A stretch of DNA of 63,051 bases, the filler included, from Octopus bimaculoides (taxonomy: Eukaryota), in NCBI RefSeq assembly GCF_001194135.2. It is 5 parts of 5 records of this genome, joined end to end, with 100 filler letters (N's around TTAATTAATTAA, not from the genome) between each part and the next. Parts side by side here need not be neighbours in the genome. Positions count along the whole stretch, not along the records: positions 1 to 19,751 come from NC_068982.1; 4 more parts are not named here. One strand, written 5' to 3'. Position numbers and translations under genes: made by a program. How positions within the stretch are numbered: position 1 is the stretch's first letter; each line of letters begins with the position of its first letter. Below are positions 1,800 to 17,762 of this stretch, in pieces. Under the pieces are notes generated by a model, which was not told where the DNA came from, ran no database searches, and was given only the letters and a program-made list of their open reading frames with translations.

Positions 1800-2375
1800 T
1801 TATTAAGTTTGGATTTGAATTTATTAATAAAGTCATTTTCTCTGTTTTCTCTCGATTTCATCCAGATTGTATAGTTTATGAAATGGAAATATTATAAATA
1901 TTTTCCGGCCACATGTTGCTAGGTGATTACTCAGCGGTATTTGGCAGACTTCTGGATTTTTAATTCGTTGTCAGTGCACACGTGAGCGTTCTGATAGTGC
2001 ATTGCTTGTCTGGCCAACATACAGTTCTTCACAATTCGAACATTTGATGCAATAGATTAAATTTCTGATTTTGCAGTTCATATTTGCGTTTGTGAATATT
2101 TACTCCGTTTTTGTGTTCATAGATGGGCTGGTATGAATTAATTGGCATGTACCGCATCGGCTATCATTGCATTTAGATACAGTGAATGGTTGGTCTTTGT
2201 TGCTAAGGTCAAACCTTGCCGTTGTTAATAACTTTTTCAAGCTTTTAAGCTGTCTTTTACTGAGACTTATAGTTTGGTCTGTAATGATATCTCTTAATTC
2301 CTTACTTTGAGCAGTGATTGGCAGGTTTGCTTTAGCGATATTGAAGATGTTCTGGTGGCATGGATTGTGCATCAC
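1800..2375 (-). pseudogene. PLE GIY-YIG endonuclease domain, disrupted
   Basis: IFTNANMNCKIRNLIYCIKCSNCEELYVGQTSNALSERSRVH*QRIKNPEVCQIPLSNHL, read by hand from the minus strand. Confidence 0.88.
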
Positions 2376-4123
2376 TATAAATGGAATGATTTGTTCTTGT
2401 TTTTCTCTTTTTGTGTCGTCCTCAGTTGTGTGGGTATTTTCATAGCCCGCTGAATACCAATTTCTATAAGTAGTGACGGGTATTTTTGTTCGAGCTGAAA
2501 TTCTTTCAGTTCCATCAGGGGCTGATACCTGATCTTCAAATCTTCCAAAATGGTACAGATTCTTCTAGCTAAGCAGTGTGGGATGTTACGTTTTGTATGT
2601 GGTGGATGGCACAATTTAAAATTCAGGTATTGATGTGTATCTGTGTGTTTATAATATATATCTGTGATAATGGTGGTGTTCTTTTTAATTACAATTATAT
2701 CTAGGAATGGTAATTTGGTACTGCTCATCTCCTTTGTAAATTGGATGGATGGGTGTAGGTTGTTCAGGAGGATATTGAACTCTTCCACAGTGTTTTGAGA
2801 TTTTGTCCAGATTATGAAGCAATTAATTGTCAAGGTATCTCTTCCATGCCTTTTCAATATATTTCCTAAATTCAGTGTTGTATCTCTCCTCTATTTCCTG
2901 GTAGAGTTTTTGTTCTAAGTATCCCATCACCGAGTTCGCGTAAACGGANNNNNNNNNNNNNNNNNNNNNNNNNNNNNNNNNNNNNNNNNNNNNNNNNNNN
3001 NNNNNNNNGTTTTGTATGTGGTGGATGGCACAATTTAAAATTCAGGTATTGATGTGTATCTGTGTGTTTATAATATATATCTGTGATAATGGTGGTGTTC
3101 TTTTTAATTACAATTATATCTAGGAATGGTAATTTGGTACTGCTCATCTCCTTTGTAAATTGGATGGATGGGTGTAGGTTGTTCAGGAGGATATTGAACT
3201 CTTCCACAGTGTTTTGAGATTTTGTCCAGATTATGAAGCAATTAATTGTCAAGGTATCTCTTCCATGCCTTTTCAATATATTTCCTAAATTCAGTGTTGT
3301 ATCTCTCCTCTATTTCCTGGTAGAGTTTTTGTTCTAAGTATCCCATCACCGAGTTCGCGTAAACGGAAGCAAACCTCGTTCCCATGGCCGTGCCTTTAAT
3401 TTGGATATAGTTCTTTCCATTGAAGAAGATAGTGTTGTTTTCCACAATAAGTCTGACTGAGTCTAATAGAAATGTCACTGTGAATCTGTTGGGAATTGCT
3501 TCTCTATGTTTATCTACCCAGTATTTAATCGTCTTTATTCCTAAATCATGTGGGATATTGGTGTAAAGGCTTACTACATCAAAGCTCGGAAGGATTGAGT
3601 TTGTTTCAGTTGTTTTGGGAAGGTGGGACAGGAAATCGATGTCATCCCGAATGAAGCTGGGTATGTAGGTACATAGTGGCTTCAAAATAATGTCGCTGAA
3701 ATTGCTTAGACGATGTGTAGGGAATTCTGGGCCAGCTATAATTGGTCTAAGTTTTAAGTCTTTTGAGTATAGTAATTGTATGTATTCACTTCCTTGTTCT
3801 TTTACTGCCTGTTGAATATCTTCTGATTTATGAATTTTTGGTAAGCCGTAAAAGTTGCTGGGTTTTGGCTCTAAATTGGTGATGCATTCTCTTTCACTGT
3901 CAGTGAGTGAGTTGTGTTTTGAAGCCAGGTAGTCGATCTTCTTCATGATGTGGTAGTCTTTATTAGAGGGTATTTCACAATAGAAGGTTATATCCTTCAG
4001 TTGGTCCGCAACCAAATCCTTATAGTATCCCACATCTATAATAACAATTGCACCCCCTTTATCTGCTTGTTTAATTATTATTGTTTCATCGCTTCGTATG
4101 CGTTTAAGTGCAGATATTTCTCA
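2375..4123 (-). pseudogene. PLE reverse transcriptase, disrupted
   Basis: ORFs 3242..4033 and 2375..2857 carry the PLE RT motifs. The catalytic YLDD appears as YLDN plus a 4-bp insertion. The 359-bp internal duplication across the N-gap is an assembly overlap. Confidence 0.92.
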
Positions 4124-4264: not shown

Positions 4265-4300
4265 ATTATTATTATCATTATTATTATTATTATTATTATT

Positions 4301-4387
<87 letters not shown>
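4265..4387 (-). repeat. (AAC)n(AAT)n microsatellite read in frame as poly-Asn within the PLE ORF
   Basis: 37 Asn + Asp + 3 Asn between RLVEFF and KSNFTPP in ORF 4121..4417. Confidence 0.9.
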
Positions 4388-5674: not shown

Positions 5675-6000
5675 TAGCCGGACTCAGTGGTTAGAGCGTC
5701 GGGTTCACAATCATGAGGTAGTGAGTTCGATTCCTGGATCGAGCTGTGTGTTGTATTCTTGAGCAAGACGCTTTATTTCACGTTGTTCCAATTCACTCAT
5801 CCGTAGAAATGAGCTGCGATGTCACTGGTGCCAAGCTGTATTGGCGTTTGCCTTTCCCTTGAATAACATCCGTGAACTGGAGATGGAAGGCTGGTATGCA
5901 TGGGCGACTGCTGGTTTTCCACACACAGCCTTTCCCGGACTTGTGCCTTGTGGGGGAGGACTTTCTAGGTGCAATCCAATATTCATTCATGACTGAAGGG
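5675..6000 (+). mobile_element. SINE family C (tRNA head + CORE-like segment), tail variant 1
   Basis: A box (GGACTCAGTGG), B box (GAGTTCGATTCC) and TTCTTGAGCAAGACGCTTTATTTCACGTTG core shared with 22125 and 31025. Confidence 0.8.
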
Positions 6001-6473
6001 GATATCCTTGTATATGCAGTTAACAGTTTTTTCCACTCGCTAATCTGTATAACTCATACATGTGAGTGTATTCATCCTTTACAATTGAATAAATAGACAC
6101 ACTTGAATGTTTACTGGCTGATGTCTGTCGATTTTATATCCCCGTTTTTTTTTTATTTGCCCTATAAATCATGGGTAAATCACTCTTTTACCCCTGCCCA
6201 GATATAAATATAATACTCAATTGCGAGATTGCCATGCAATAACTAACACTTGACTATGAATAATCGGGTACCCTACCAGCAGTATATTGGATAGGTACTA
6301 TCCCTTAGTTGGTTTTTCAACCTCTAACTCATGCAGAAATATGTATATGTATATATATATATATATATATAAAGGTATATATACATATATATAAAGGTGT
6401 GGTATTCAAGGCCTTGCATACCACACCTGCTTTCTGGTGGTTATTTTTTTTATACACACACATATTCGTTGAG

Positions 6474-6596
6474 TTAGTCACTTGCTGCTCTGAGTTTTGC
6501 GTGTGGTTCCACAGTGTCTTTAGGCAAGTTGAAGCACGTAATTTGCCTGAAGACACTGTGCATAAACGGGTGAAACTCAGAGTAGTAAGAGATTGG
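6474..6596 (+). ncRNA. Candidate structured RNA hairpin (pre-miRNA-like)
   Basis: Ungapped 57-position stem (41 Watson-Crick, 10 G-U, 6 mismatches) with a 9-nt loop. Mature sequence not recognised. Confidence 0.45.
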
Positions 6597-6633
6597 ACCC
6601 AGACCCAAATAAACAGTGTGTGTGTGTCTGTAA

Positions 6634-6666
<33 letters not shown>

Positions 6667-7519: not shown

Positions 7520-8050
7520 TTGTAAACAACTTGCAGATGCAAGTGCTGCCAGTTGGAACCTTCGCATACCGGATGTCAGCGAGTTCATGTGGTCATCAGG
7601 AGAAAATGCGCGCGCTGTTTCAGGGCCTACCTTTTGACGGCATCATTGCTACCGGTCTCCCTCGCTGAAATGAGGCTCCGCCTGCTAGATCAACTGATCA
7701 TCAGATTTAGCTCAATATTCTTCTAGCCATTGCTCATCGTCTCTTTTTAACTAAATCCAGTGGCTTGTCTCTTTCCACTGTAGTTTGGATACCACTCATG
7801 GCGGTATTTCCTTTACAATGAGTGAGGCCTAACGATAACAACAGTCGCCTCACACTGTGTCCAACGAATCTCCTACATACGACTTTGATTGGAAAACGGT
7901 CCGCTTTCCGGCCTGCGTCTTCGCATTCCTCGAGGAGGTTTACATAACGGTCAATCTTTCGAGCCAAAGCGGCGTCCATGTTATCTTCATGAGAAACCGT
8001 TAACTCGACTAGATTTACCACTTTCTTTCACACCATATGATATTCGCATA
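7520..8050 (-). mobile_element. HERO-type (R2 group, RLE) non-LTR retrotransposon, 3' fragment
   Basis: IIWCERK..VNLVELTVSHEDNMDAALARKIDRYVNLLEECEDAGRKADRFPIKVVCRRFVGHSV matches the HERO RLE pattern ELTVPWE.N...A..RK..KY..L...C...GW....P+EVGCRGF.G.S. Confidence 0.85.
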
Positions 8051-10389: not shown

Positions 10390-10830
10390 AAGCGGAGAGC
10401 TAGGAGAATTGCTCACACGCCTGACAAAAATGTTTAGCGGCTTTTCGTTCGTGTTTGTGTTCTGAGTTCATATTCTGCTGAAGTCGACTTTACCTTTCAT
10501 CCTTTTGGGGTGGATAAAATAAGTACCAGTCAAGTACTGGGGTCTATGTAATCCACTTACCCCTCCATTCAAAATCCTGGTGGCCCTGTGCCAAAATTTG
10601 AAACCATTATTATTATTATTAAAGACAGCAATTTAGCACGCTGGACGAAATGTTCAGCGGTATTTCGCCCGTCGCTACGTTCTGAGTTCAAATTCCGCCG
10701 AGGTCGACTTTGCCTTTCATCCTTTCGAAGTCGATAAAATAAGTGCTAGTTGAACACTGGGGTCGATGTAATCGACTCATCTCTACCTTTTCCAAGCTAC
10801 TCTTGTGGTAAAAATTTGAAATAATCATTA
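10390..10830 (+). mobile_element. Two tandem SINE family A copies
   Basis: GAGTTCAAATTCCGCCGAGGTCGACTTTGCCTTTCATCCTTTC...GTCGATAAAATAAGT body occurs twice, separated by an (ATT)n tail. Confidence 0.85.
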
Positions 10831-11073
10831 ATAGTCGGACGTCGAGAATTAAGTGTCTGTAACACGATACACCCTTTCGTTTCTACGAGATATCCCGTTT
10901 TCTAGCTTCTCGGTATATCTACGATCTATATTACTGCATGAAGATCAAAACTTTCTCTTATTTTTATCTCTAGACCAAGAGCTAATCAACCATTGTTAAA
11001 CACACCTATGACAGCTCAGGCAACTCAGGCAACTGACTTTTTCATTTATAAAGGAGATGCAAACATAACAATT

Positions 11074-11285
11074 GGCATGGCTGCGGGGTTAAGAAGATCG
11101 CTTTGCAACCGCCTACATCCGGGTTCAGTCTCATTGCGCGGTAACTTGGGCAAGTACCTTCCATTATAGCCCCGAACTGACCAATACCTTGTGACTGAAT
11201 TTGGTAGACAGAAACTTACCCGCTACGTGGGACTGAACCCTAACCGGCGTTGTCGCAAAGCAGGCTTTTTAACCACGGCCATTTC
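11074..11285. mobile_element. SINE family B head (+) followed by an inverted SINE B head (-)
   Basis: GGGTTCAGTCTCA at ~11121 and its reverse complement TGGGACTGAACCC at ~11228. Confidence 0.7.
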
Positions 11286-13199
11286 ATGATTAACCCTTCA
11301 TTTCTTTTCTGGAAAGCGATGAAATTGGTGCCAGTCATATACTGAGGTAATGTGAAATTGTTATTACGTCTTCCTGTTTATAAGGAAAAAATTGTCCTTA
11401 GAAACGAAACTCTTGAGAACATTTCCTTTTGAATTTCTCTCTATTGATAGACATCTCCATTCTCGTCACTTCCGTGTAAAGGTATCAGTAATGCGTGTTT
11501 ATTCCACCGAGCATCGAGCGAGAATAATATTCTAAAAGGATTATAGTGTAATCTCCTTCTCGGTGACAAATCAGTGAGATAAAATCGAATATCTTACTGA
11601 TTAAAAAAGAAAACACCAATAGAGGCTATTTTATCTCGCAAACGTAGGGAATTAAAAGAATATCAAACAAAATATAAATTCGGTAAATTTTTTTTCCACT
11701 CTCTCTTTCTAGAATTAGTTCGTACCAGAGAAACTAGAGATTGAGAAAAATTCTGATAATTTTAGGGTGGAAAAAAAAAAAGAAAAAGCAGAGAAAATGA
11801 ACGAGAGAAAGTGAAAAAGATGGGAACAAAAAGGGCGGCAGGAGAGATAGAGAGTAGAGTAAAGACAGATAAAGAGACATAGGTGATATACAACAGAGTG
11901 ATGTAGTAAAGTAGCGTTCAGATCTGATTGATAGTGGGAAGAAGCTTCCAGTACGGCGATGCAGTGATGGAGCTTGTATGTCAAGATTTGTACCATCGTA
12001 ACCAGGGTTGGGATGTAATACCAGCGTGACAGTCCTTAATTGACTAAGCATATTCACATCTCATAAAATCCATCTCGGCAATTTTACAACAGATCACAAC
12101 ACTAATTGAATAAAAGTGCTTAAAAGGATTTGATGTAGATAGAACCCAGAGCGGGGAAAGTCAACAAGCGAATGACTTCCTCAGTTTCTTTTATTTTTTC
12201 TCTTTTTCTCTCTGTCTTTCTCGTTTTCCTTCTTTCTTTTCATTTTATTTTATTTCATATTTGTTGTTGATGCTGTTTTTTGACGTTTATTTACTTTTTT
12301 TTTTAACCGAGACGTGATAGAACGTCCGGCATTATGGTAGTTCTGACGCGGCTCTGATCACAAACTCAATTCGTTCCTTTTATCTGCACAGAGCGAATAC
12401 CTTGGAAATTGTGTAAATTTCCCGATGCCAACCGGAACGAGAGGATCACATTGGAACAGAAAGGCGATGAATATAATATATCTATTAGATGAAGCGCTGG
12501 GAGATACATTAAGTTAAGCTCGCTGTATTATGCATGTGCAAATAAGAAATATTTGTCCGGAACTTCATCCTGTACGGACTGGTGCTGCCTGAAACATTAT
12601 TAAAGCTAATTAGCCTCCATTAATAAGTGTTAGTTTTGCTGGTGAATGGAAGAAGTAATGGGGGTGGTAGAAGTAAGAGTTGTTTTGTGTAGGCAATTTG
12701 AGCTTATGTGTATGTAAATCTGCATACATCTCTTTGTGTGTATGTGTGTGAGTATGTGTGTGTGTGAGTGTGCGATAGCATGGTTTTTGTTTGCTTTTTA
12801 TGTTTGCATAGCAGTATGTAAATATATATTAGAATAGGTGTTAGTCTATATGTCTGTGTGTGAGTCAAAGAGTGAGAGAAAGAGAGAGGGAATGAAAGAA
12901 GAGAATGGGCGCAAAGAGAGAGAGAGGGGGGGGGAGATTGTGTGTATGAGAGTGTGTGTCTGTGCGAATGTTTATGTGCATTTGTCAATGAAAGTAAAAA
13001 TAACCGGCATAATTTAAAGCATATGCGTGTTCATGCTTTTGTTGCGGGGTGGGTATATAGAACGATTATAGATATTTATTGGATCATTCAGCTCTTCCTA
13101 TTTAATTAACGGCTCCACCCAAGCTCTTTCTTATGTTACCTTTTAAGTATAATATACATACATATCTATCATTTCGTACATTACCGTCCGACCGTCACA

Positions 13200-14200
13200 T
13201 CTTGCCCTAGTTTTAGATTGACCAGTTGAAAGCGTCTAATTTTTCGTTTCTTGTGCAAAGGACACTCTATCGGTCAAGTGGTCCATTTGCTGCCGACGCC
13301 TTCCAAATGGAGGGCTCTGTGTGTCTGGTATGATGATGAAAAGTCTTACACTGAAACTGCGGTACTAGCAAGAGATTCCTGGACAATAAGCAGGTGAGGT
13401 GGCCATTTGTCAGGAACGTTTATCCTCAGTGCGCTTCTTTCAGACAGCTGCAGTCCTGGTTCAAATGAAGACCATGACTGAACGCCTGCTATTTGGAATG
13501 TCAGGGGCTCCCAGTTCACTGCTAGTCAGGCAATGAGGCTGGTGGAACTTCCTAGTTAACTTCTTGCAGAGGAATAGTGGTGGGAAACAGTGACGAACTT
13601 CTCGGGGAAATTTTAGTTGTCGCAGAGAATTCACTTGCTGGTCTGCTTTGAAGAATTTTCAGTATGAATACTATAGATAACTTCCAGATATTTATGCAAG
13701 TACTACCGGGAAAAAGTGCCGTCAGCCAAGTCTGAACGACGAAGCGTTTCTTCCTACAGTTGTTCAGAGTCTGAACATTGTTGGTGTTTGTAGGTATATC
13801 GAAAAGTTGTTGGCTTGTGCAGGGCTGATGTGGCTATCAATCGTGTCTATCATGATGATCACTGGCTGCCTTTCTTTAACCGTGAAAGCAGGTATTTTCC
13901 CTATTTCATGGTCATGATGAAAGATACTGTATGGTGGGCACGACAAAAAAAAAAAAAAATCAGACTTTGAACTGTCCCCACTTACCTCTTAGGCCAAGCT
14001 TTCATCGACTTTTTACAGTTCCACTAAGAAAAGAAAGTGGGAGTGAATAGGGAACGGCTGTCTCTAGTCAGTTTGCTGAGAGGTGGATTCGAGTGGAGAG
14101 CATAGCATGACTGAATGGGATAACTGTTAGCAAATGTCCATTTACCAGGGAATGTTGCGAGTGAGGATTCTTACGCTTGATAGCCAAGTTTATTTTGAAT
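13200..14200 (+). mobile_element. L1/Tx1-like LINE, decayed C-terminal (zf-RVT) region
   Basis: Frameshifted peptides CRQPSLNDE...VVQSLNIVGVCRYIEKLL..G...LSIVSI, FNRESRYF..MVMMKDTVWWARQK and LIDF.QFH..RK resemble Tx1 ORF2 C-termini. Confidence 0.55.
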
Positions 14201-14304
14201 CTGTGAGGCTTCTTAATTTACTTCTTCTTTCTATTAACCCCAATGCCTTGTCCCCTTGTAGCCAATGAAAGAAAATATGATTATCAATATTTTATTATCT
14301 GTAA

Positions 14305-14775
14305 GGCGGCGAGCTGGCAGAAACGTTAGCACGCCGGGCGAAATGCTTAGCGGTATTTCGTCAGTCTTTACGTTCTGAGTTCAAATTCCGCAGTGGTCGA
14401 TTTTGCCTTTCATCCTTTTGGGGGTCGATAAATTAAGTACCAGTTGCGTACTGGGGCCGATCTAATCGACTGGCTCCCTTTCCCAAAATTTTGGGCCTTG
14501 TGCTTAGAGTAGAAAAGAATATTTTATTGTCTTGAGCTGATAAGCTTGTTCGAGTGTCGAAATAAATACATTGAATTATTTGTTCGAGTTCTTTGCGTTC
14601 TGAGTTCAAATCTTGCCGAGGTCAACTTTGCTTTTCATCCACCCCTGTCCTCAGTATAGATAAAATAAAGTACCAGCCTACTACTGGTATCGATGATATC
14701 GTCTAACCCCACTTCCTACCTCCTGTCCCGCACTATAAATTTAGGCTGGCCTTGTGGCTTAATTAGAAACAATTA
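14305..14775 (+). mobile_element. SINE family A: well-preserved copy (14305-14522) plus a degenerate second copy
   Basis: GGCGGCGAGCTGGCAGAAACGTTAGCACGCCGGGCGAAATGCTTAGCGG head, B box GAGTTCAAATTCC and family body. Confidence 0.9.
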
Positions 14776-14829
14776 TAATTGTATCATCTTAGACAGGTAC
14801 CTTAGTGCAGAGGCACTTTCTCATTAGAT

Positions 14830-15020
14830 CAGAATCTACAAAGCAGTTTCGATTAGTATTGTGTTCTAATTTTCTAATTTTAGCGTCTATGTCTAGTATT
14901 ATATTCTCAGTGCTGACCAATATGCATCTTCTTAAAATCGCTTTGGCATACTTGTCTAATTTCATACACATCTTGATGTCTTTGCTGAAACTATGAACAA
15001 TTTTTGGTAGGGTTTCCACC
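14830..15020 (-). mobile_element. R4/Dong-clade LINE RT fragment
   Basis: IVHSFSKDIKMCMKLDKYAKAILRRCILVSTENIILDIDAKIRKLE matches the R4-type V..FS.DI.M.FGLDKCAK...+G.L..T..I.L.....I..LE. Confidence 0.7.
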
Positions 15021-15237
15021 ACCGCCACCGTCGCCGCCACCACCACCATCAAACAAAAATACGTCATTTAAGCGCACATACACGGGTTCAAACATAAACA
15101 TCTATAATCACAATTAGAAAAGCCGTCATCCTCTTCAGAATATAGTTAAAAACGTCAATTTAAATTACAGAAACATTATAAGTAAAAATAAAACACCATT
15201 CACCAATTACAGCAATAAATATTTTACTAGCAATAAA

Positions 15238-15685
15238 CGCGGCAAGCTGGCGGAATCGTTAGCAGGGCGGGAAAATGCTTAGCGACATTTCGTCCGTCTC
15301 TACGTTCTGAATTCAAGTTCCGCTAGGATCGTTTTGGCCTTTCAGCTTTACGGGGTTAATAAAAATAAGTACAAGTTGATCACTGATATCGATTTAATCG
15401 ATCTGGCCCCACTTCCACCCAATTACTACTTTGTGCCAAAATTTGAAGTCAATATTTTGCTAGCAAAATGGCGGCTAATTGGCAAAATCTTTAGCACGCC
15501 GGGCAAAATGCTTAGCGGTATTTCGTCCGTCTTTGCATTCTGAGTTCAAATCCACCGGGGTCAACTTTGCCCTTCATCCTTTCGGAATCGAGGAAATCAG
15601 TACCAAATGAGCAGTGGGGGTCGATGTTATCGGCATAGTCCCTTCCCAAAACTTGCTAGCTTCATGCCAAAATTTGAAAGCAATA
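15238..15685 (+). mobile_element. Two tandem SINE family A copies
   Basis: Family A head and body occur twice. Confidence 0.85.
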
Positions 15686-17399: not shown

Positions 17400-17697
17400 T
17401 TGTCACCAGGTATAGATAGTCTCACCGTCACCCATTACTGTCTTCGTCACCACCACCACCGACATCCCCGATACCATCGCCACCACCATCGCTACTAGCA
17501 CTATCATAATCACAACCAATACCAAAGTAGTCACCATCACCACCACCACCACCACCACCATCACTACCATCACCACCCAAGTCACCACGGTCATTACCAC
17601 TATCACCATCATCACCATCAACACTAACACTCAACACTACACCGCCAAATCCACCACCACCACCACCACCACCACTACTACTTGTCAAAGGTAGTAA

Positions 17698-17762
<65 letters not shown>

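What the first reader, a model, noticed from the sequence alone, without database searches (positions are those of the whole stretch)
6474..6596. Ungapped 57-bp hairpin with strand-specific G-U bias: candidate cephalopod microRNA or structured RNA
Positions i and j pair along i+j=13070 from 6474/6596 to 6530/6540 with no bulges: 41 Watson-Crick pairs, 10 G-U pairs, 6 mismatches and a 9-nt loop (GAAGCACGT). All ten transition-type differences between the arms are G-U on the + strand and none is A-C. A neutrally decaying DNA inverted repeat should split these about evenly, so this points to selection on a + strand RNA. Caveat: three of the G-U pairs are in the outermost 6 bp, where my extension is biased. 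The apical 21 bp are fully paired, with possible arms ~6508-6529 and ~6542-6563. Coleoid cephalopods are known to have many lineage-specific miRNAs, and I do not recognise this sequence. It could also be an ADAR substrate or a MITE relic.
Basis: partly seen in the sequence, partly recalled or inferred. Interest (0 to 1): 0.75.

Follow-up and report, generated by a model that had tools for sequence, protein, structure and literature searches.

The report
Strand-biased long hairpin in octopus DNA
A real 123-base inverted repeat in repeat-rich, non-coding octopus DNA folds into a very stable RNA hairpin on one strand only; it may be a young microRNA-like gene, but its shape is not that of a standard microRNA precursor and I could obtain no expression or conservation evidence, so a decaying inverted duplication is almost as likely.

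Summary
Positions 6474-6596 pair without gaps along i+j=13070: 41 Watson-Crick pairs, 10 G-U pairs, 6 mismatches and a 9-nt loop. The + strand RNA folds at -73.3 kcal/mol (z -13.3) and the - strand at -43.8. All 10 transition-type differences between the arms are G-U on the + strand. Simulated neutral decay reaches this asymmetry in 4 of 3000 runs, and the two-sided p is 0.016 if the three outermost pairs are dropped. The window is octopod, repeat-rich and apparently non-coding. The hairpin is single-copy in the window, has no target-site duplication, matches no Rfam family, and has no relative in any collection I could reach. No cephalopod genome or small-RNA data could be searched by DNA, so conservation, copy number and expression remain untested. 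The geometry is not canonical for a microRNA precursor: a 57-bp stem, a 7-9 nt loop and no CNNC motif. Unrelated long palindromes occur in other octopus DNA, which lowers the prior. My verdict is a + strand hairpin RNA under structural constraint, possibly a young microRNA-like locus (about 0.45; bona fide miRNA about 0.2). A neutral inverted-duplication relic stands at about 0.4. Interest is modest.

The parts
6474..6596 (+). Whole imperfect inverted repeat, a 123-nt hairpin with a 57-position ungapped stem
   Evidence: 41 WC pairs, 10 GU pairs and 6 mismatches; + strand RNA MFE -73.3 kcal/mol, z -13.3
6474..6530 (+). 5' arm
   Evidence: it pairs with 6540-6596 along i+j=13070
6531..6539 (+). 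Apical loop GAAGCACGU; it is 7 nt if G6531:U6539 closes it
6540..6596 (+). 3' arm
6510..6560 (+). Apical module: a 21-22 bp helix with no mismatch and 2-3 G-U pairs, plus the loop. On its own the 61-nt stretch 6505-6565, which adds five flanking bases on each side, folds at -33.4 kcal/mol.
6501..6509 (+). 5' side of the single internal loop; its partner side is 6561-6569. It holds 5 of the 6 non-pairing mismatches.
   Evidence: clustering p about 0.005
6475..6503 (+). Basal module: about 29 bp of helix with 6568-6595, containing one A.A, one G.G and 6 G-U pairs (7 with the outermost pair 6474/6596). Read as an 11-12 bp lower stem, a roughly 17-22 bp duplex and then the internal loop, it is the part that best approximates pri-miRNA geometry (cut model B).
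   Evidence: the geometry reading is inference
6449..6468 (+). Upstream (CA)n-containing flank. In the context fold it pairs with the downstream (TG)n at about 6615-6634, across an asymmetric 15-nt bulge. This is probably chance microsatellite complementarity.
6608..6613 (+). AATAAA hexamer 12 nt downstream of the hairpin, followed by a GU-rich tract. It is a possible + strand polyadenylation signal but weak evidence in AT-rich DNA.

Best explanation
The feature is an old, imperfect inverted duplication in repeat-rich, non-coding octopus DNA.

Shown: the two arms differ at 16 of 57 positions. That corresponds to about 0.16-0.18 substitutions per site per arm if the repeat began perfect, so it is not a recent copy.

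Inferred origin: it arose in one step by local inverted duplication, for example by replication template switching.

Inferred mechanism: it is transcribed on the + strand as part of a Pol II transcript. A T4 run inside the 5' arm and a T8 run just upstream argue against Pol III. The RNA folds into a dsRNA hairpin of about 55 bp, and selection has preserved that fold. Transitions were tolerated only where they give G-U on the + strand, and non-pairing changes are confined to one internal loop.

In a mollusc, which shows no evidence of a dedicated endo-siRNA pathway, such a hairpin can be handled in two ways. One is the miRNA machinery (Drosha, Dicer, miRNA-type Argonaute), which would make it a young, lineage-restricted, non-canonical miRNA-like precursor. 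Small RNAs would come either from the basal module (about 6487-6508 with 6562-6585) or from the perfect apical duplex (about 6510-6531 with 6539-6562). The other is ADAR, which would edit it in any tissue where it is expressed.

My probabilities are about 0.45 for RNA-level constraint of some kind. Within that, about 0.2 is for a bona fide small-RNA-producing miRNA-like gene and about 0.25 for another constrained dsRNA element in an intron, UTR or lncRNA.
For: The hairpin is real and extreme. It is among the most stable 130-nt windows in 57 kb of octopus DNA outside microsatellites.

The strand asymmetry is 29.5 kcal/mol between the RNA strands. The G-U:A-C split is 10:0, or 11:0 if the loop-closing pair is counted. 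The binomial p is 0.002, or 0.016 without the outer three pairs, and neutral-decay simulation gives 4 of 3000. Local G+T skew does not explain it. The asymmetry is much smaller at the DNA level (-32.4 against -25.0), as expected if RNA is the relevant molecule.

Non-pairing mismatches cluster in one internal loop (p about 0.005) and none falls in the apical 21 bp (p about 0.05).

The region is not coding. No protein in 5.8 billion resembles any of the six frames. It is not a detectable repeat copy and has no target-site duplication.

Context from papers: octopus gained 90 novel miRNA families, and species-specific ones were deliberately left unannotated (PMC9699675). One-step inverted duplications do seed new miRNAs (PMC10710096). 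Molluscs, including O. bimaculoides, show no endo-siRNA pathway (PMC12479628). Hairpins in octopus introns and 3'UTRs are the main ADAR substrates (PMC9699675).
Against: There is no evidence of transcription, small RNAs, editing or conservation, because none of these could be tested.

The geometry is non-canonical for the Microprocessor: a 57-bp stem rather than about 35 bp, a 7-9 nt loop rather than 10 nt or more, no CNNC in 6555-6640, and no correctly placed UG or UGU (criteria from PMC10710096 and PMC6943042). There is no Rfam match. The one candidate seed 8-mer found in the held octopus table is listed there as a non-seed control.

The prior is low. In primates only about 18 of more than 6000 template-switch hairpins became miRNAs (PMC10710096). 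Two unrelated near-perfect long palindromes sit in just 17 kb of O. sinensis DNA, so such structures are common in octopus assemblies.

The asymmetry statistic rests on 7-10 sites and was the reason the locus was flagged in the first place.
Confidence: 0.45

Rival explanations
1. A neutral relic. The inverted repeat was created by template switching, a foldback element or a MITE-like element, is not functionally transcribed, and is simply decaying. The all-G-U pattern and the clustered mismatches are then chance plus one multi-nucleotide mutation event.
For: Long palindromes appear common in octopus DNA. Two unrelated near-perfect foldbacks, both abutting (TA)n tracts, lie in one 17-kb O. sinensis contig. 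The present hairpin also sits between (TA)n/(CA)n/(TG)n tracts. The surroundings are transposon fragments and microsatellites with no detectable host exon. Nothing shows expression. With roughly 10^5 such repeats per genome, a p of 0.002-0.016 will occur many times by chance. Base rates for hairpins becoming genes are about 0.3% (PMC10710096).
Against: A 10:0 split (7:0 conservatively) together with confinement of all pair-breaking changes to one loop is unlikely for any single neutral repeat. No second copy exists in the window or in 37 kb of other octopus DNA. There is no target-site duplication of 4 bp or more other than microsatellite ATAT/TATA.
Confidence: 0.4
2. The strand asymmetry comes from a strand-specific process rather than from selection. 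Three versions are possible. (a) A perfect dsRNA hairpin was hyper-edited by ADAR (A to I, read as G) and the edited RNA was copied back into the genome by a retroelement's reverse transcriptase. (b) The hairpin is the RNA-level structural element of a transposon family, for example the 3' stem of a LINE or SINE followed by a microsatellite tail. (c) A DNA hairpin forms preferentially on one replication template strand.
For: The wobble G's carry an ADAR-like 5' neighbour profile: U6, A2, C1, G1. The still-paired A's show U5, A7, C6, G6. Fisher's p is 0.045 for U upstream. About 10 of 34 stem adenosines would have been converted, which is a plausible hyper-editing fraction (own knowledge). An AATAAA and a (TG)n(TA)n tract follow the hairpin, as at a retroposed 3' end. 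Reverse-transcriptase elements and SINEs are abundant around it.
Against: No retrocopy boundaries or target-site duplication were found. No other family members were seen. The neighbour-preference test is marginal, and G upstream is not significantly depleted (p 0.64). The DNA-level energy asymmetry is small. Known LINE and SINE 3' stems are far shorter (own knowledge).
Confidence: 0.1
3. It belongs to an already known class: a catalogued octopus miRNA (MirGeneDB), a mirtron, or a fragment of a coding exon.
For: A GUUAGU at 6473 and a CAG at 6600-6602 loosely resemble splice sites at the hairpin ends. One + frame and two - frames are open across the hairpin.
Against: There is no Rfam hit at E <= 1. 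There are no sequence-string hits in 8 million papers or in the held supplements of the octopus miRNA and MirGeneDB papers. At about 130 nt it is much longer than typical mirtrons, has no polypyrimidine tract, and is flanked by microsatellite rather than exon. No protein homologue exists in any frame.
Confidence: 0.05

Closest known systems
De novo miRNA hairpins created by replication template switching (Monttinen et al. 2023, PMC10710096)
   Same: It is a stand-alone inverted duplication with a very short spacer that gives near-complete pairing of a whole hairpin in non-coding DNA. It would depend on a host transcript for expression.
   Different: The origin by template switching is inferred, because no ancestral sequence is available. 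The stem is 57 bp, whereas those authors stress a preference for about 35 bp with a loop of 10 nt or more. No expression has been shown.
Lineage-specific 'novel' octopus miRNA families (Zolotarov et al. 2022, PMC9699675; MirGeneDB)
   Same: It is from an octopod genome. It is an unrecognised hairpin with a fully paired duplex of about 22 bp. The authors state that species-restricted miRNAs younger than about 50 My were left out of the annotation.
   Different: Annotated families were required to have read support and to be present in two species, and neither could be tested here. The canonical geometry and the CNNC motif are absent. No sequence or seed match was found in the parts of the data that are held.
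MITE-derived palindromic miRNA precursors such as the human mir-548 family from Made1 elements (own knowledge)
   Same: It is a near-palindromic element whose two arms form the miRNA hairpin directly.
   Different: Made1 is multi-copy with TA target-site duplications. Here no second copy and no target-site duplication were found.
Drosophila hairpin RNA (hpRNA) endo-siRNA loci (own knowledge)
   Same: It is a long, nearly perfect intramolecular dsRNA hairpin that could yield more than one phased duplex.
   Different: hpRNAs are hundreds of bp long and need Dicer-2 and AGO2. Molluscs, including O. bimaculoides, show no evidence of an endo-siRNA pathway (PMC12479628).
ADAR substrate hairpins in octopus introns and 3'UTRs (PMC9699675)
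   Same: It offers 22 bp plus about 29 bp of dsRNA separated by one internal loop, which is ample for promiscuous A-to-I editing. The wobble G's sit mostly after U, the preferred ADAR context.
   Different: Editing is a property of RNA, and no RNA data were available. ADAR substrates in general are not expected to be under selection to keep pairing.

Membership tests
Canonical animal miRNA precursor (Microprocessor substrate / MirGeneDB criteria) | A hairpin with at least 16 paired positions between two arms of about 22 nt | tested here: met
   The apical duplex has 21-22 of 22 positions paired. The basal candidate duplex 6487-6503 has 16 of 17 paired. The criterion is from own knowledge of Fromm et al. 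2015.
Canonical animal miRNA precursor (Microprocessor substrate / MirGeneDB criteria) | A stem of about 35 bp flanked by single-stranded RNA, with an unstructured apical loop of 10 nt or more | tested here: not met
   The stem has 57 positions and the loop is 7-9 nt. The criterion is as stated in PMC10710096. A reading in which the internal loop acts as the apical junction gives about 29 bp and remains speculative.
Canonical animal miRNA precursor (Microprocessor substrate / MirGeneDB criteria) | Processing motifs: basal UG at -14, apical UGU/GUG, and CNNC 16-18 nt 3' of the Drosha cut | tested here: not met
   There is no CNNC anywhere in 6555-6640, no UGU or GUG in the apical loop, and no UG at -14 for either cut model. 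The motifs are listed in PMC6943042. They are helpful rather than obligatory, especially outside vertebrates.
Canonical animal miRNA precursor (Microprocessor substrate / MirGeneDB criteria) | Reads of 20-26 nt from both arms with 2-nt 3' offsets and homogeneous 5' ends | not testable with these tools
   No small-RNA-seq data are accessible.
Canonical animal miRNA precursor (Microprocessor substrate / MirGeneDB criteria) | Membership of a described family, or conservation in a second species | tested here: inconclusive
   There is no Rfam match at E <= 1 and no string match in papers or held supplements. MirGeneDB itself and cephalopod genomes are not searchable by DNA here. The two octopus loci I fetched are paralogous transposon copies, not orthologous to this locus.
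MITE / foldback transposon | Terminal inverted repeats | tested here: met
   This is trivially met, because the whole element is two inverted arms.
MITE / foldback transposon | A target-site duplication flanking the element | tested here: not met
   No direct repeat of 4 bp or more lies at any boundary pair except microsatellite ATAT/TATA, and there is no TA at the symmetric boundaries. An old duplication could have decayed.
MITE / foldback transposon | Multiple dispersed copies in the genome | tested here: inconclusive
   There is no other copy in the 19.7-kb window or in 37 kb of O. sinensis and O. vulgaris DNA. Genome-wide copy number is not testable here.
Mirtron | The hairpin ends coincide with functional 5' GU and 3' AG splice sites of a short intron between exons | tested here: not met
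   GUUAGU at 6473 and CAG at 6600-6602 exist. However, the flanks are microsatellite rather than exon, there is no polypyrimidine tract, and the length of about 130 nt is atypical.
hpRNA / endo-siRNA locus | A long hairpin processed by a dedicated siRNA Dicer and Argonaute | not tested
   The pathway shows no evidence of existing in molluscs according to PMC12479628. The processing itself is not testable here.
ADAR substrate | At least 20-30 bp of near-perfect intramolecular dsRNA in a transcript | tested here: met
   The structure requirement is met. Transcription and A-to-G mismatches in RNA-seq are not testable here.

The most novel reading that the evidence does not exclude
The hairpin is a genomic fossil of ADAR hyper-editing. 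A once-perfect dsRNA hairpin was edited at about 10 adenosines, mostly in the preferred U-A context. The edited RNA was reverse-transcribed and re-integrated, which froze the I (=G) opposite U. That would explain why every transition is G-U on one strand without invoking selection on structure.
Probability: 0.05. Interest if true: 0.75.

Novelty: new member of a known kind. Interest (0 to 1): 0.3.

Why it matters
If small-RNA data showed precise processing, this would be a species- or genus-restricted octopus miRNA caught at an early stage. It would have been born from an inverted duplication, would still be over-long, and would already show selection for RNA pairing. That bears on how coleoids gained so many new miRNA families, whose source is stated to be unknown in PMC9699675. 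The G-U against A-C asymmetry test is also a cheap, sequence-only screen for RNA-level constraint in the many inverted repeats of cephalopod genomes. If the locus is instead a neutral relic, it is ordinary. It would then mainly warn that with roughly 10^5 palindromes per genome, a 10:0 split will occur by chance.

Tried and rejected
1. Rfam, both strands, at E <= 1 gave nothing on the hairpin. The only hits were microsatellite pseudo-matches to mir-297, mir-466 and similar families nearby.

2. Literature searches for arm sequences in RNA and DNA spelling gave 0 papers. There were 0 hits in the held supplements of Zolotarov 2022 and MirGeneDB 2.1. The MirMachine paper has no held supplements. 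The miRNA FASTA of the octopus paper is not held. Look-ups of eleven candidate seed-site 8-mers found only GACACTGA, which is listed as a non-seed control; that file was cut when stored.

3. Scans of public DNA collections with arm patterns:
- Metagenomes gave one hit, L001. It is a 2.3-kb contig ending in G4T4 telomere repeats (a ciliate nanochromosome), has no hairpin, and is judged a chance match.
- Prokaryotic genomes gave one hit, L002. It is a 14-bp hairpin in what reads as coding sequence (by eye FeoB-like; not checked) of a Bacteroidales MAG, and is a chance match.
- Viral contigs gave none.

4. I tried to reach cephalopod assemblies through 'proteins' translated from all six frames of the hairpin. 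There were no candidates. This also argues against coding.

5. I tried to reach the orthologous locus through the neighbouring retroelement ORF. The best relatives, from O. sinensis and O. vulgaris, were fetched as L003 and L004. They share only the transposon (about 85-92% nt identity) and a SINE in the wrong orientation. They are not syntenic and contain no hairpin homologue.

6. Exact look-ups of three window ORFs found no contig.

7. Pfam on ten ORFs around the locus found no host-gene domain.

8. The target-site duplication search was negative. The search for weak similarity to the rest of the window and to the two O. sinensis foldbacks was negative.

9. Composition skew was rejected as the cause of the G-U bias.

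10. A CpG-decay explanation was rejected by reasoning, because deamination on either strand of a self-complementary CpG gives G-U and A.C equally.

Full report
OBSERVATION

The sequence at 6474-6596 is an ungapped imperfect inverted repeat.

As RNA, the + strand folds into one continuous hairpin at -73.3 kcal/mol. Shuffles average -30.8 +/- 3.2, so z is -13.3. The - strand reaches only -43.8 (z -6.5). RNAfold adds one more pair, G6531:U6539, so the apical helix is 22 bp with a 7-nt loop. The hairpin persists when 246 nt of context are folded. In that fold the upstream (CA)n and downstream (TG)n microsatellites also pair, which I take to be chance complementarity.

The six non-pairing positions are all purine-purine or pyrimidine-pyrimidine. 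There is no A.C, so every transition-type difference between the arms is G-U on the + strand. Five of the six mismatches lie in 6501-6509 and form a single internal loop. That loop divides the stem into a basal module of about 29 bp and a perfect apical module of 22 bp.

IS IT MORE THAN CHANCE?

The fold itself certainly is. For the asymmetry, a strand-symmetric mutation process should split transitions evenly. The two-sided p is 0.002 for 10:0.

I simulated 3000 neutral decays of a perfect repeat, each with 10 transitions and 6 transversions placed at random. Only 4 reached the observed 29.5 kcal/mol strand difference, and 18 reached -73.3 kcal/mol on either strand. The + strand G+T fraction of the flanks is about 0.54, so composition does not produce the effect. 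CpG decay cannot either, because it is symmetric in a palindrome. Clustering of 5 of the 6 mismatches within nine positions has p about 0.005 under random placement, although a single multi-nucleotide mutation could also produce it. At the DNA level the strand difference is small (-32.4 against -25.0).

CONTEXT

The piece is a gapped draft scaffold with seven N runs. It is full of microsatellites and transposon fragments.

- A reverse-transcriptase ORF at 3242-4033 (-) has its most identical relatives in Octopus sinensis (86%) and O. vulgaris (83%). More distant relatives occur throughout molluscs and cnidarians.
- A SINE-like element lies at about 5683-6001; by eye it looks tRNA-derived. It matches a copy in the fetched octopus loci (L003/L004; the BLAST output did not separate them) at 81%.
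- A second SINE-like family recurs at 10428-15580.
- Pfam finds no host-gene domain in ten ORFs.
- No protein resembles any of the six reading frames across the hairpin, so it is not coding.

The hairpin lies between (TA)n tracts. A T8 run lies just upstream and a T4 run lies within the 5' arm, which makes Pol III transcription unlikely. An AATAAA at 6608-6613 is followed by a GU-rich tract. That is a conceivable + strand polyadenylation signal but weak evidence in AT-rich DNA.

WHAT COULD NOT BE DONE

None of the DNA collections on hand contains cephalopod genomes or small-RNA data.

Pattern scans of metagenomes, prokaryotic genomes and viral contigs gave only two chance hits. One is a contig with G4T4 telomere repeats, apparently a ciliate nanochromosome. 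The other is a short hairpin in a Bacteroidales MAG, inside what reads by eye as a FeoB-like coding sequence.

I reached real octopus assemblies only through the neighbouring retroelement protein. The two loci obtained were O. sinensis VCDQ01011892.1 and O. vulgaris OX597815.1. They share just the transposon at about 85-92% identity and are not syntenic with the window.

Copy number, orthology, compensatory change, expression and MirGeneDB membership are therefore untested. Literature and supplement string searches were negative but incomplete.

BACKGROUND RATE

A sliding RNAfold over the window plus the two octopus loci (57 kb, both strands) ranks this hairpin near the top of the non-microsatellite windows. 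It also reveals two stronger, strand-symmetric structures in the O. sinensis contig. These are near-perfect foldback palindromes, one with arms of about 180 nt and the other about 95 nt. Both abut (TA)n tracts, and they are unrelated in sequence to each other and to this hairpin. Some of this may be assembly artefact.

Taken at face value, long palindromes are frequent in octopus DNA. Only 162 miRNA genes are annotated in O. bimaculoides (PMC9699675). In primates about 18 of more than 6000 template-switch hairpins became miRNAs (PMC10710096). The prior that any one such repeat is a gene is therefore well below 1%.

INTERPRETATION

I combined a prior of about 0.3-1% with a likelihood ratio of roughly 60-500 from the G-U-only pattern, and a further modest factor from the mismatch clustering. 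This gives about even odds that an RNA-level process shaped the repeat.

The simplest such process is selection to keep the + strand RNA paired. Molluscs show no endo-siRNA pathway (PMC12479628). The known fates of such a hairpin are therefore processing by the miRNA machinery, ADAR editing, or both. Hairpins in introns and 3'UTRs are the main octopus ADAR substrates (PMC9699675).

The hairpin is not a canonical pri-miRNA. The stem has 57 positions rather than about 35 bp, and the loop is 7-9 nt rather than 10 nt or more (PMC10710096). There is no CNNC anywhere in 6555-6640, and no well-placed UG or UGU.

Two cut models are conceivable, and both are inference.

- Model A takes the perfect apical duplex (about 6510-6531 with 6539-6562). 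This gives a very short pre-miRNA of about 53 nt, with an unstable rather than helical lower stem.
- Model B measures about 11-12 bp up from the basal junction. It gives a duplex at about 6487-6508 with 6562-6585, in which 16 of 17 positions are paired before the internal loop. The internal loop would play the part of the apical junction, and the apical 22-bp helix would be an elaborate terminal loop.

ALTERNATIVES

(i) Neutral relic, about 0.4. This is favoured by the base rate and by the total lack of functional evidence. The asymmetry and the mismatch clustering count against it.

(ii) A non-selective strand-specific process, about 0.1. The most interesting version is ADAR hyper-editing fixed through a retrocopy. 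The wobble G's follow U in 6 of 10 cases, against 5 of 24 for the still-paired A's (p 0.045). No retrocopy boundaries or family members were found.

(iii) A mirtron, an exon, or an already catalogued miRNA, about 0.05.

A MITE is weakened by the lack of a target-site duplication and of further copies, but it is not excluded.

AGE

The arms differ at 25-28% of positions. This corresponds to a Jukes-Cantor distance of 0.31-0.35, or about 0.16-0.18 per arm. If the repeat began perfect it is old, and it should be present in other Octopus species. The comparative test is therefore both feasible and decisive.

VERDICT

The hairpin is real and carries an intriguing strand signature. Its nature is unresolved. 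It is best described as an inverted-duplication hairpin that may be a young, non-canonical miRNA-like or ADAR-substrate RNA on the + strand. It is a new member of a known kind at most, and interest is modest until expression and orthologues are checked.

Noticed in passing
window 6395-6428: A 34-nt near-perfect palindrome (AGGTGTGGTAT-T-CAAGGCCTTG-C-ATACCACACCT, with one T.C mismatch) lies 45 nt upstream of the main hairpin. It is followed after 5 nt by CTGG and then T, which loosely resembles a Helitron 3' end (hairpin, CTRR, host T). This could be coincidence.
   Followed up: partly
window 2590-2889 and 3009-3308: Two 300-bp stretches are 100% identical and flank the 60-N gap at 2949-3008 inside the retroelement. 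This is almost certainly a gap-closure or assembly duplication, and it splits the reverse-transcriptase ORF artificially.
   Followed up: no
window 2100-4033 (-): These are ORFs of a reverse-transcriptase-bearing retroelement. Relatives carry PF00078, PF28514 and PF26215. They are widespread in bivalves, octopods and cnidarians at 45-63% identity, and the closest copies are in O. sinensis and O. vulgaris (83-86% aa, about 85-92% nt).
   Followed up: partly
window 5683-6001 (+): A SINE-like element, tRNA-derived by eye (box A/B-like GTGGTTAGAGC ... GAGTTCGATTCC), is 81% identical to a copy in the fetched octopus loci (L003/L004, 2608-2922; the BLAST output did not separate the two). ARAGORN calls no tRNA here.
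   Followed up: partly
window 10428-10776, 14284-14640, 15216-15580: A second dispersed repeat family has a conserved core GTTCTGAGTTCAAATTCCGCCGAGGTCGACTTTGCCTTTCATCC (6 copies at 63-100%). It is probably a cephalopod SINE.
   Followed up: no
window 7734-8021 (-): A 95-aa ORF (MVNLVELTVSHEDNMDAALARKIDRYVNLLEECEDAG...) recalls, from memory, the C-terminal module of tyrosine-recombinase/DIRS-type retroelements. It has no Pfam hit and no exact match on record.
   Followed up: partly
L003 3611-3970 and L003 10322-10511 (O. sinensis VCDQ01011892.1): Two near-perfect foldback palindromes have arms of about 180 nt and about 95 nt and loops of 5-10 nt. In 191-nt and 181-nt windows they fold at -168 and -115 kcal/mol. 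Both abut (TA)n tracts, and they are unrelated to each other and to the window hairpin. They are either a common class of octopus palindromes or long-read assembly artefacts.
   Followed up: partly
L001 (SXGS01679908.1) 314-348: A metagenome contig of 2290 bp ends in GGGGTTTT repeats, which marks a spirotrich-ciliate nanochromosome. It shares 30 of 33 bases with the hairpin's 5' arm and loop (CCACAGTGTCTTTAGGCAAaTTGAAaCgC), apparently inside an ORF (by eye). It contains no inverted repeat, and I judge the match to be chance.
   Followed up: partly
window 4268-4385; 17445-17690; 17697-17760: Long trinucleotide arrays are present: (ATT)n/(GTT)n, (CAC)n-like and (GTA)n. They create long spurious ORFs and, like the (TG)n tracts, strongly strand-asymmetric RNA folds (for example 18751: -69 against -30 kcal/mol). 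This shows that G-U-driven strand asymmetry also arises trivially in GT-rich repeats.
   Followed up: no
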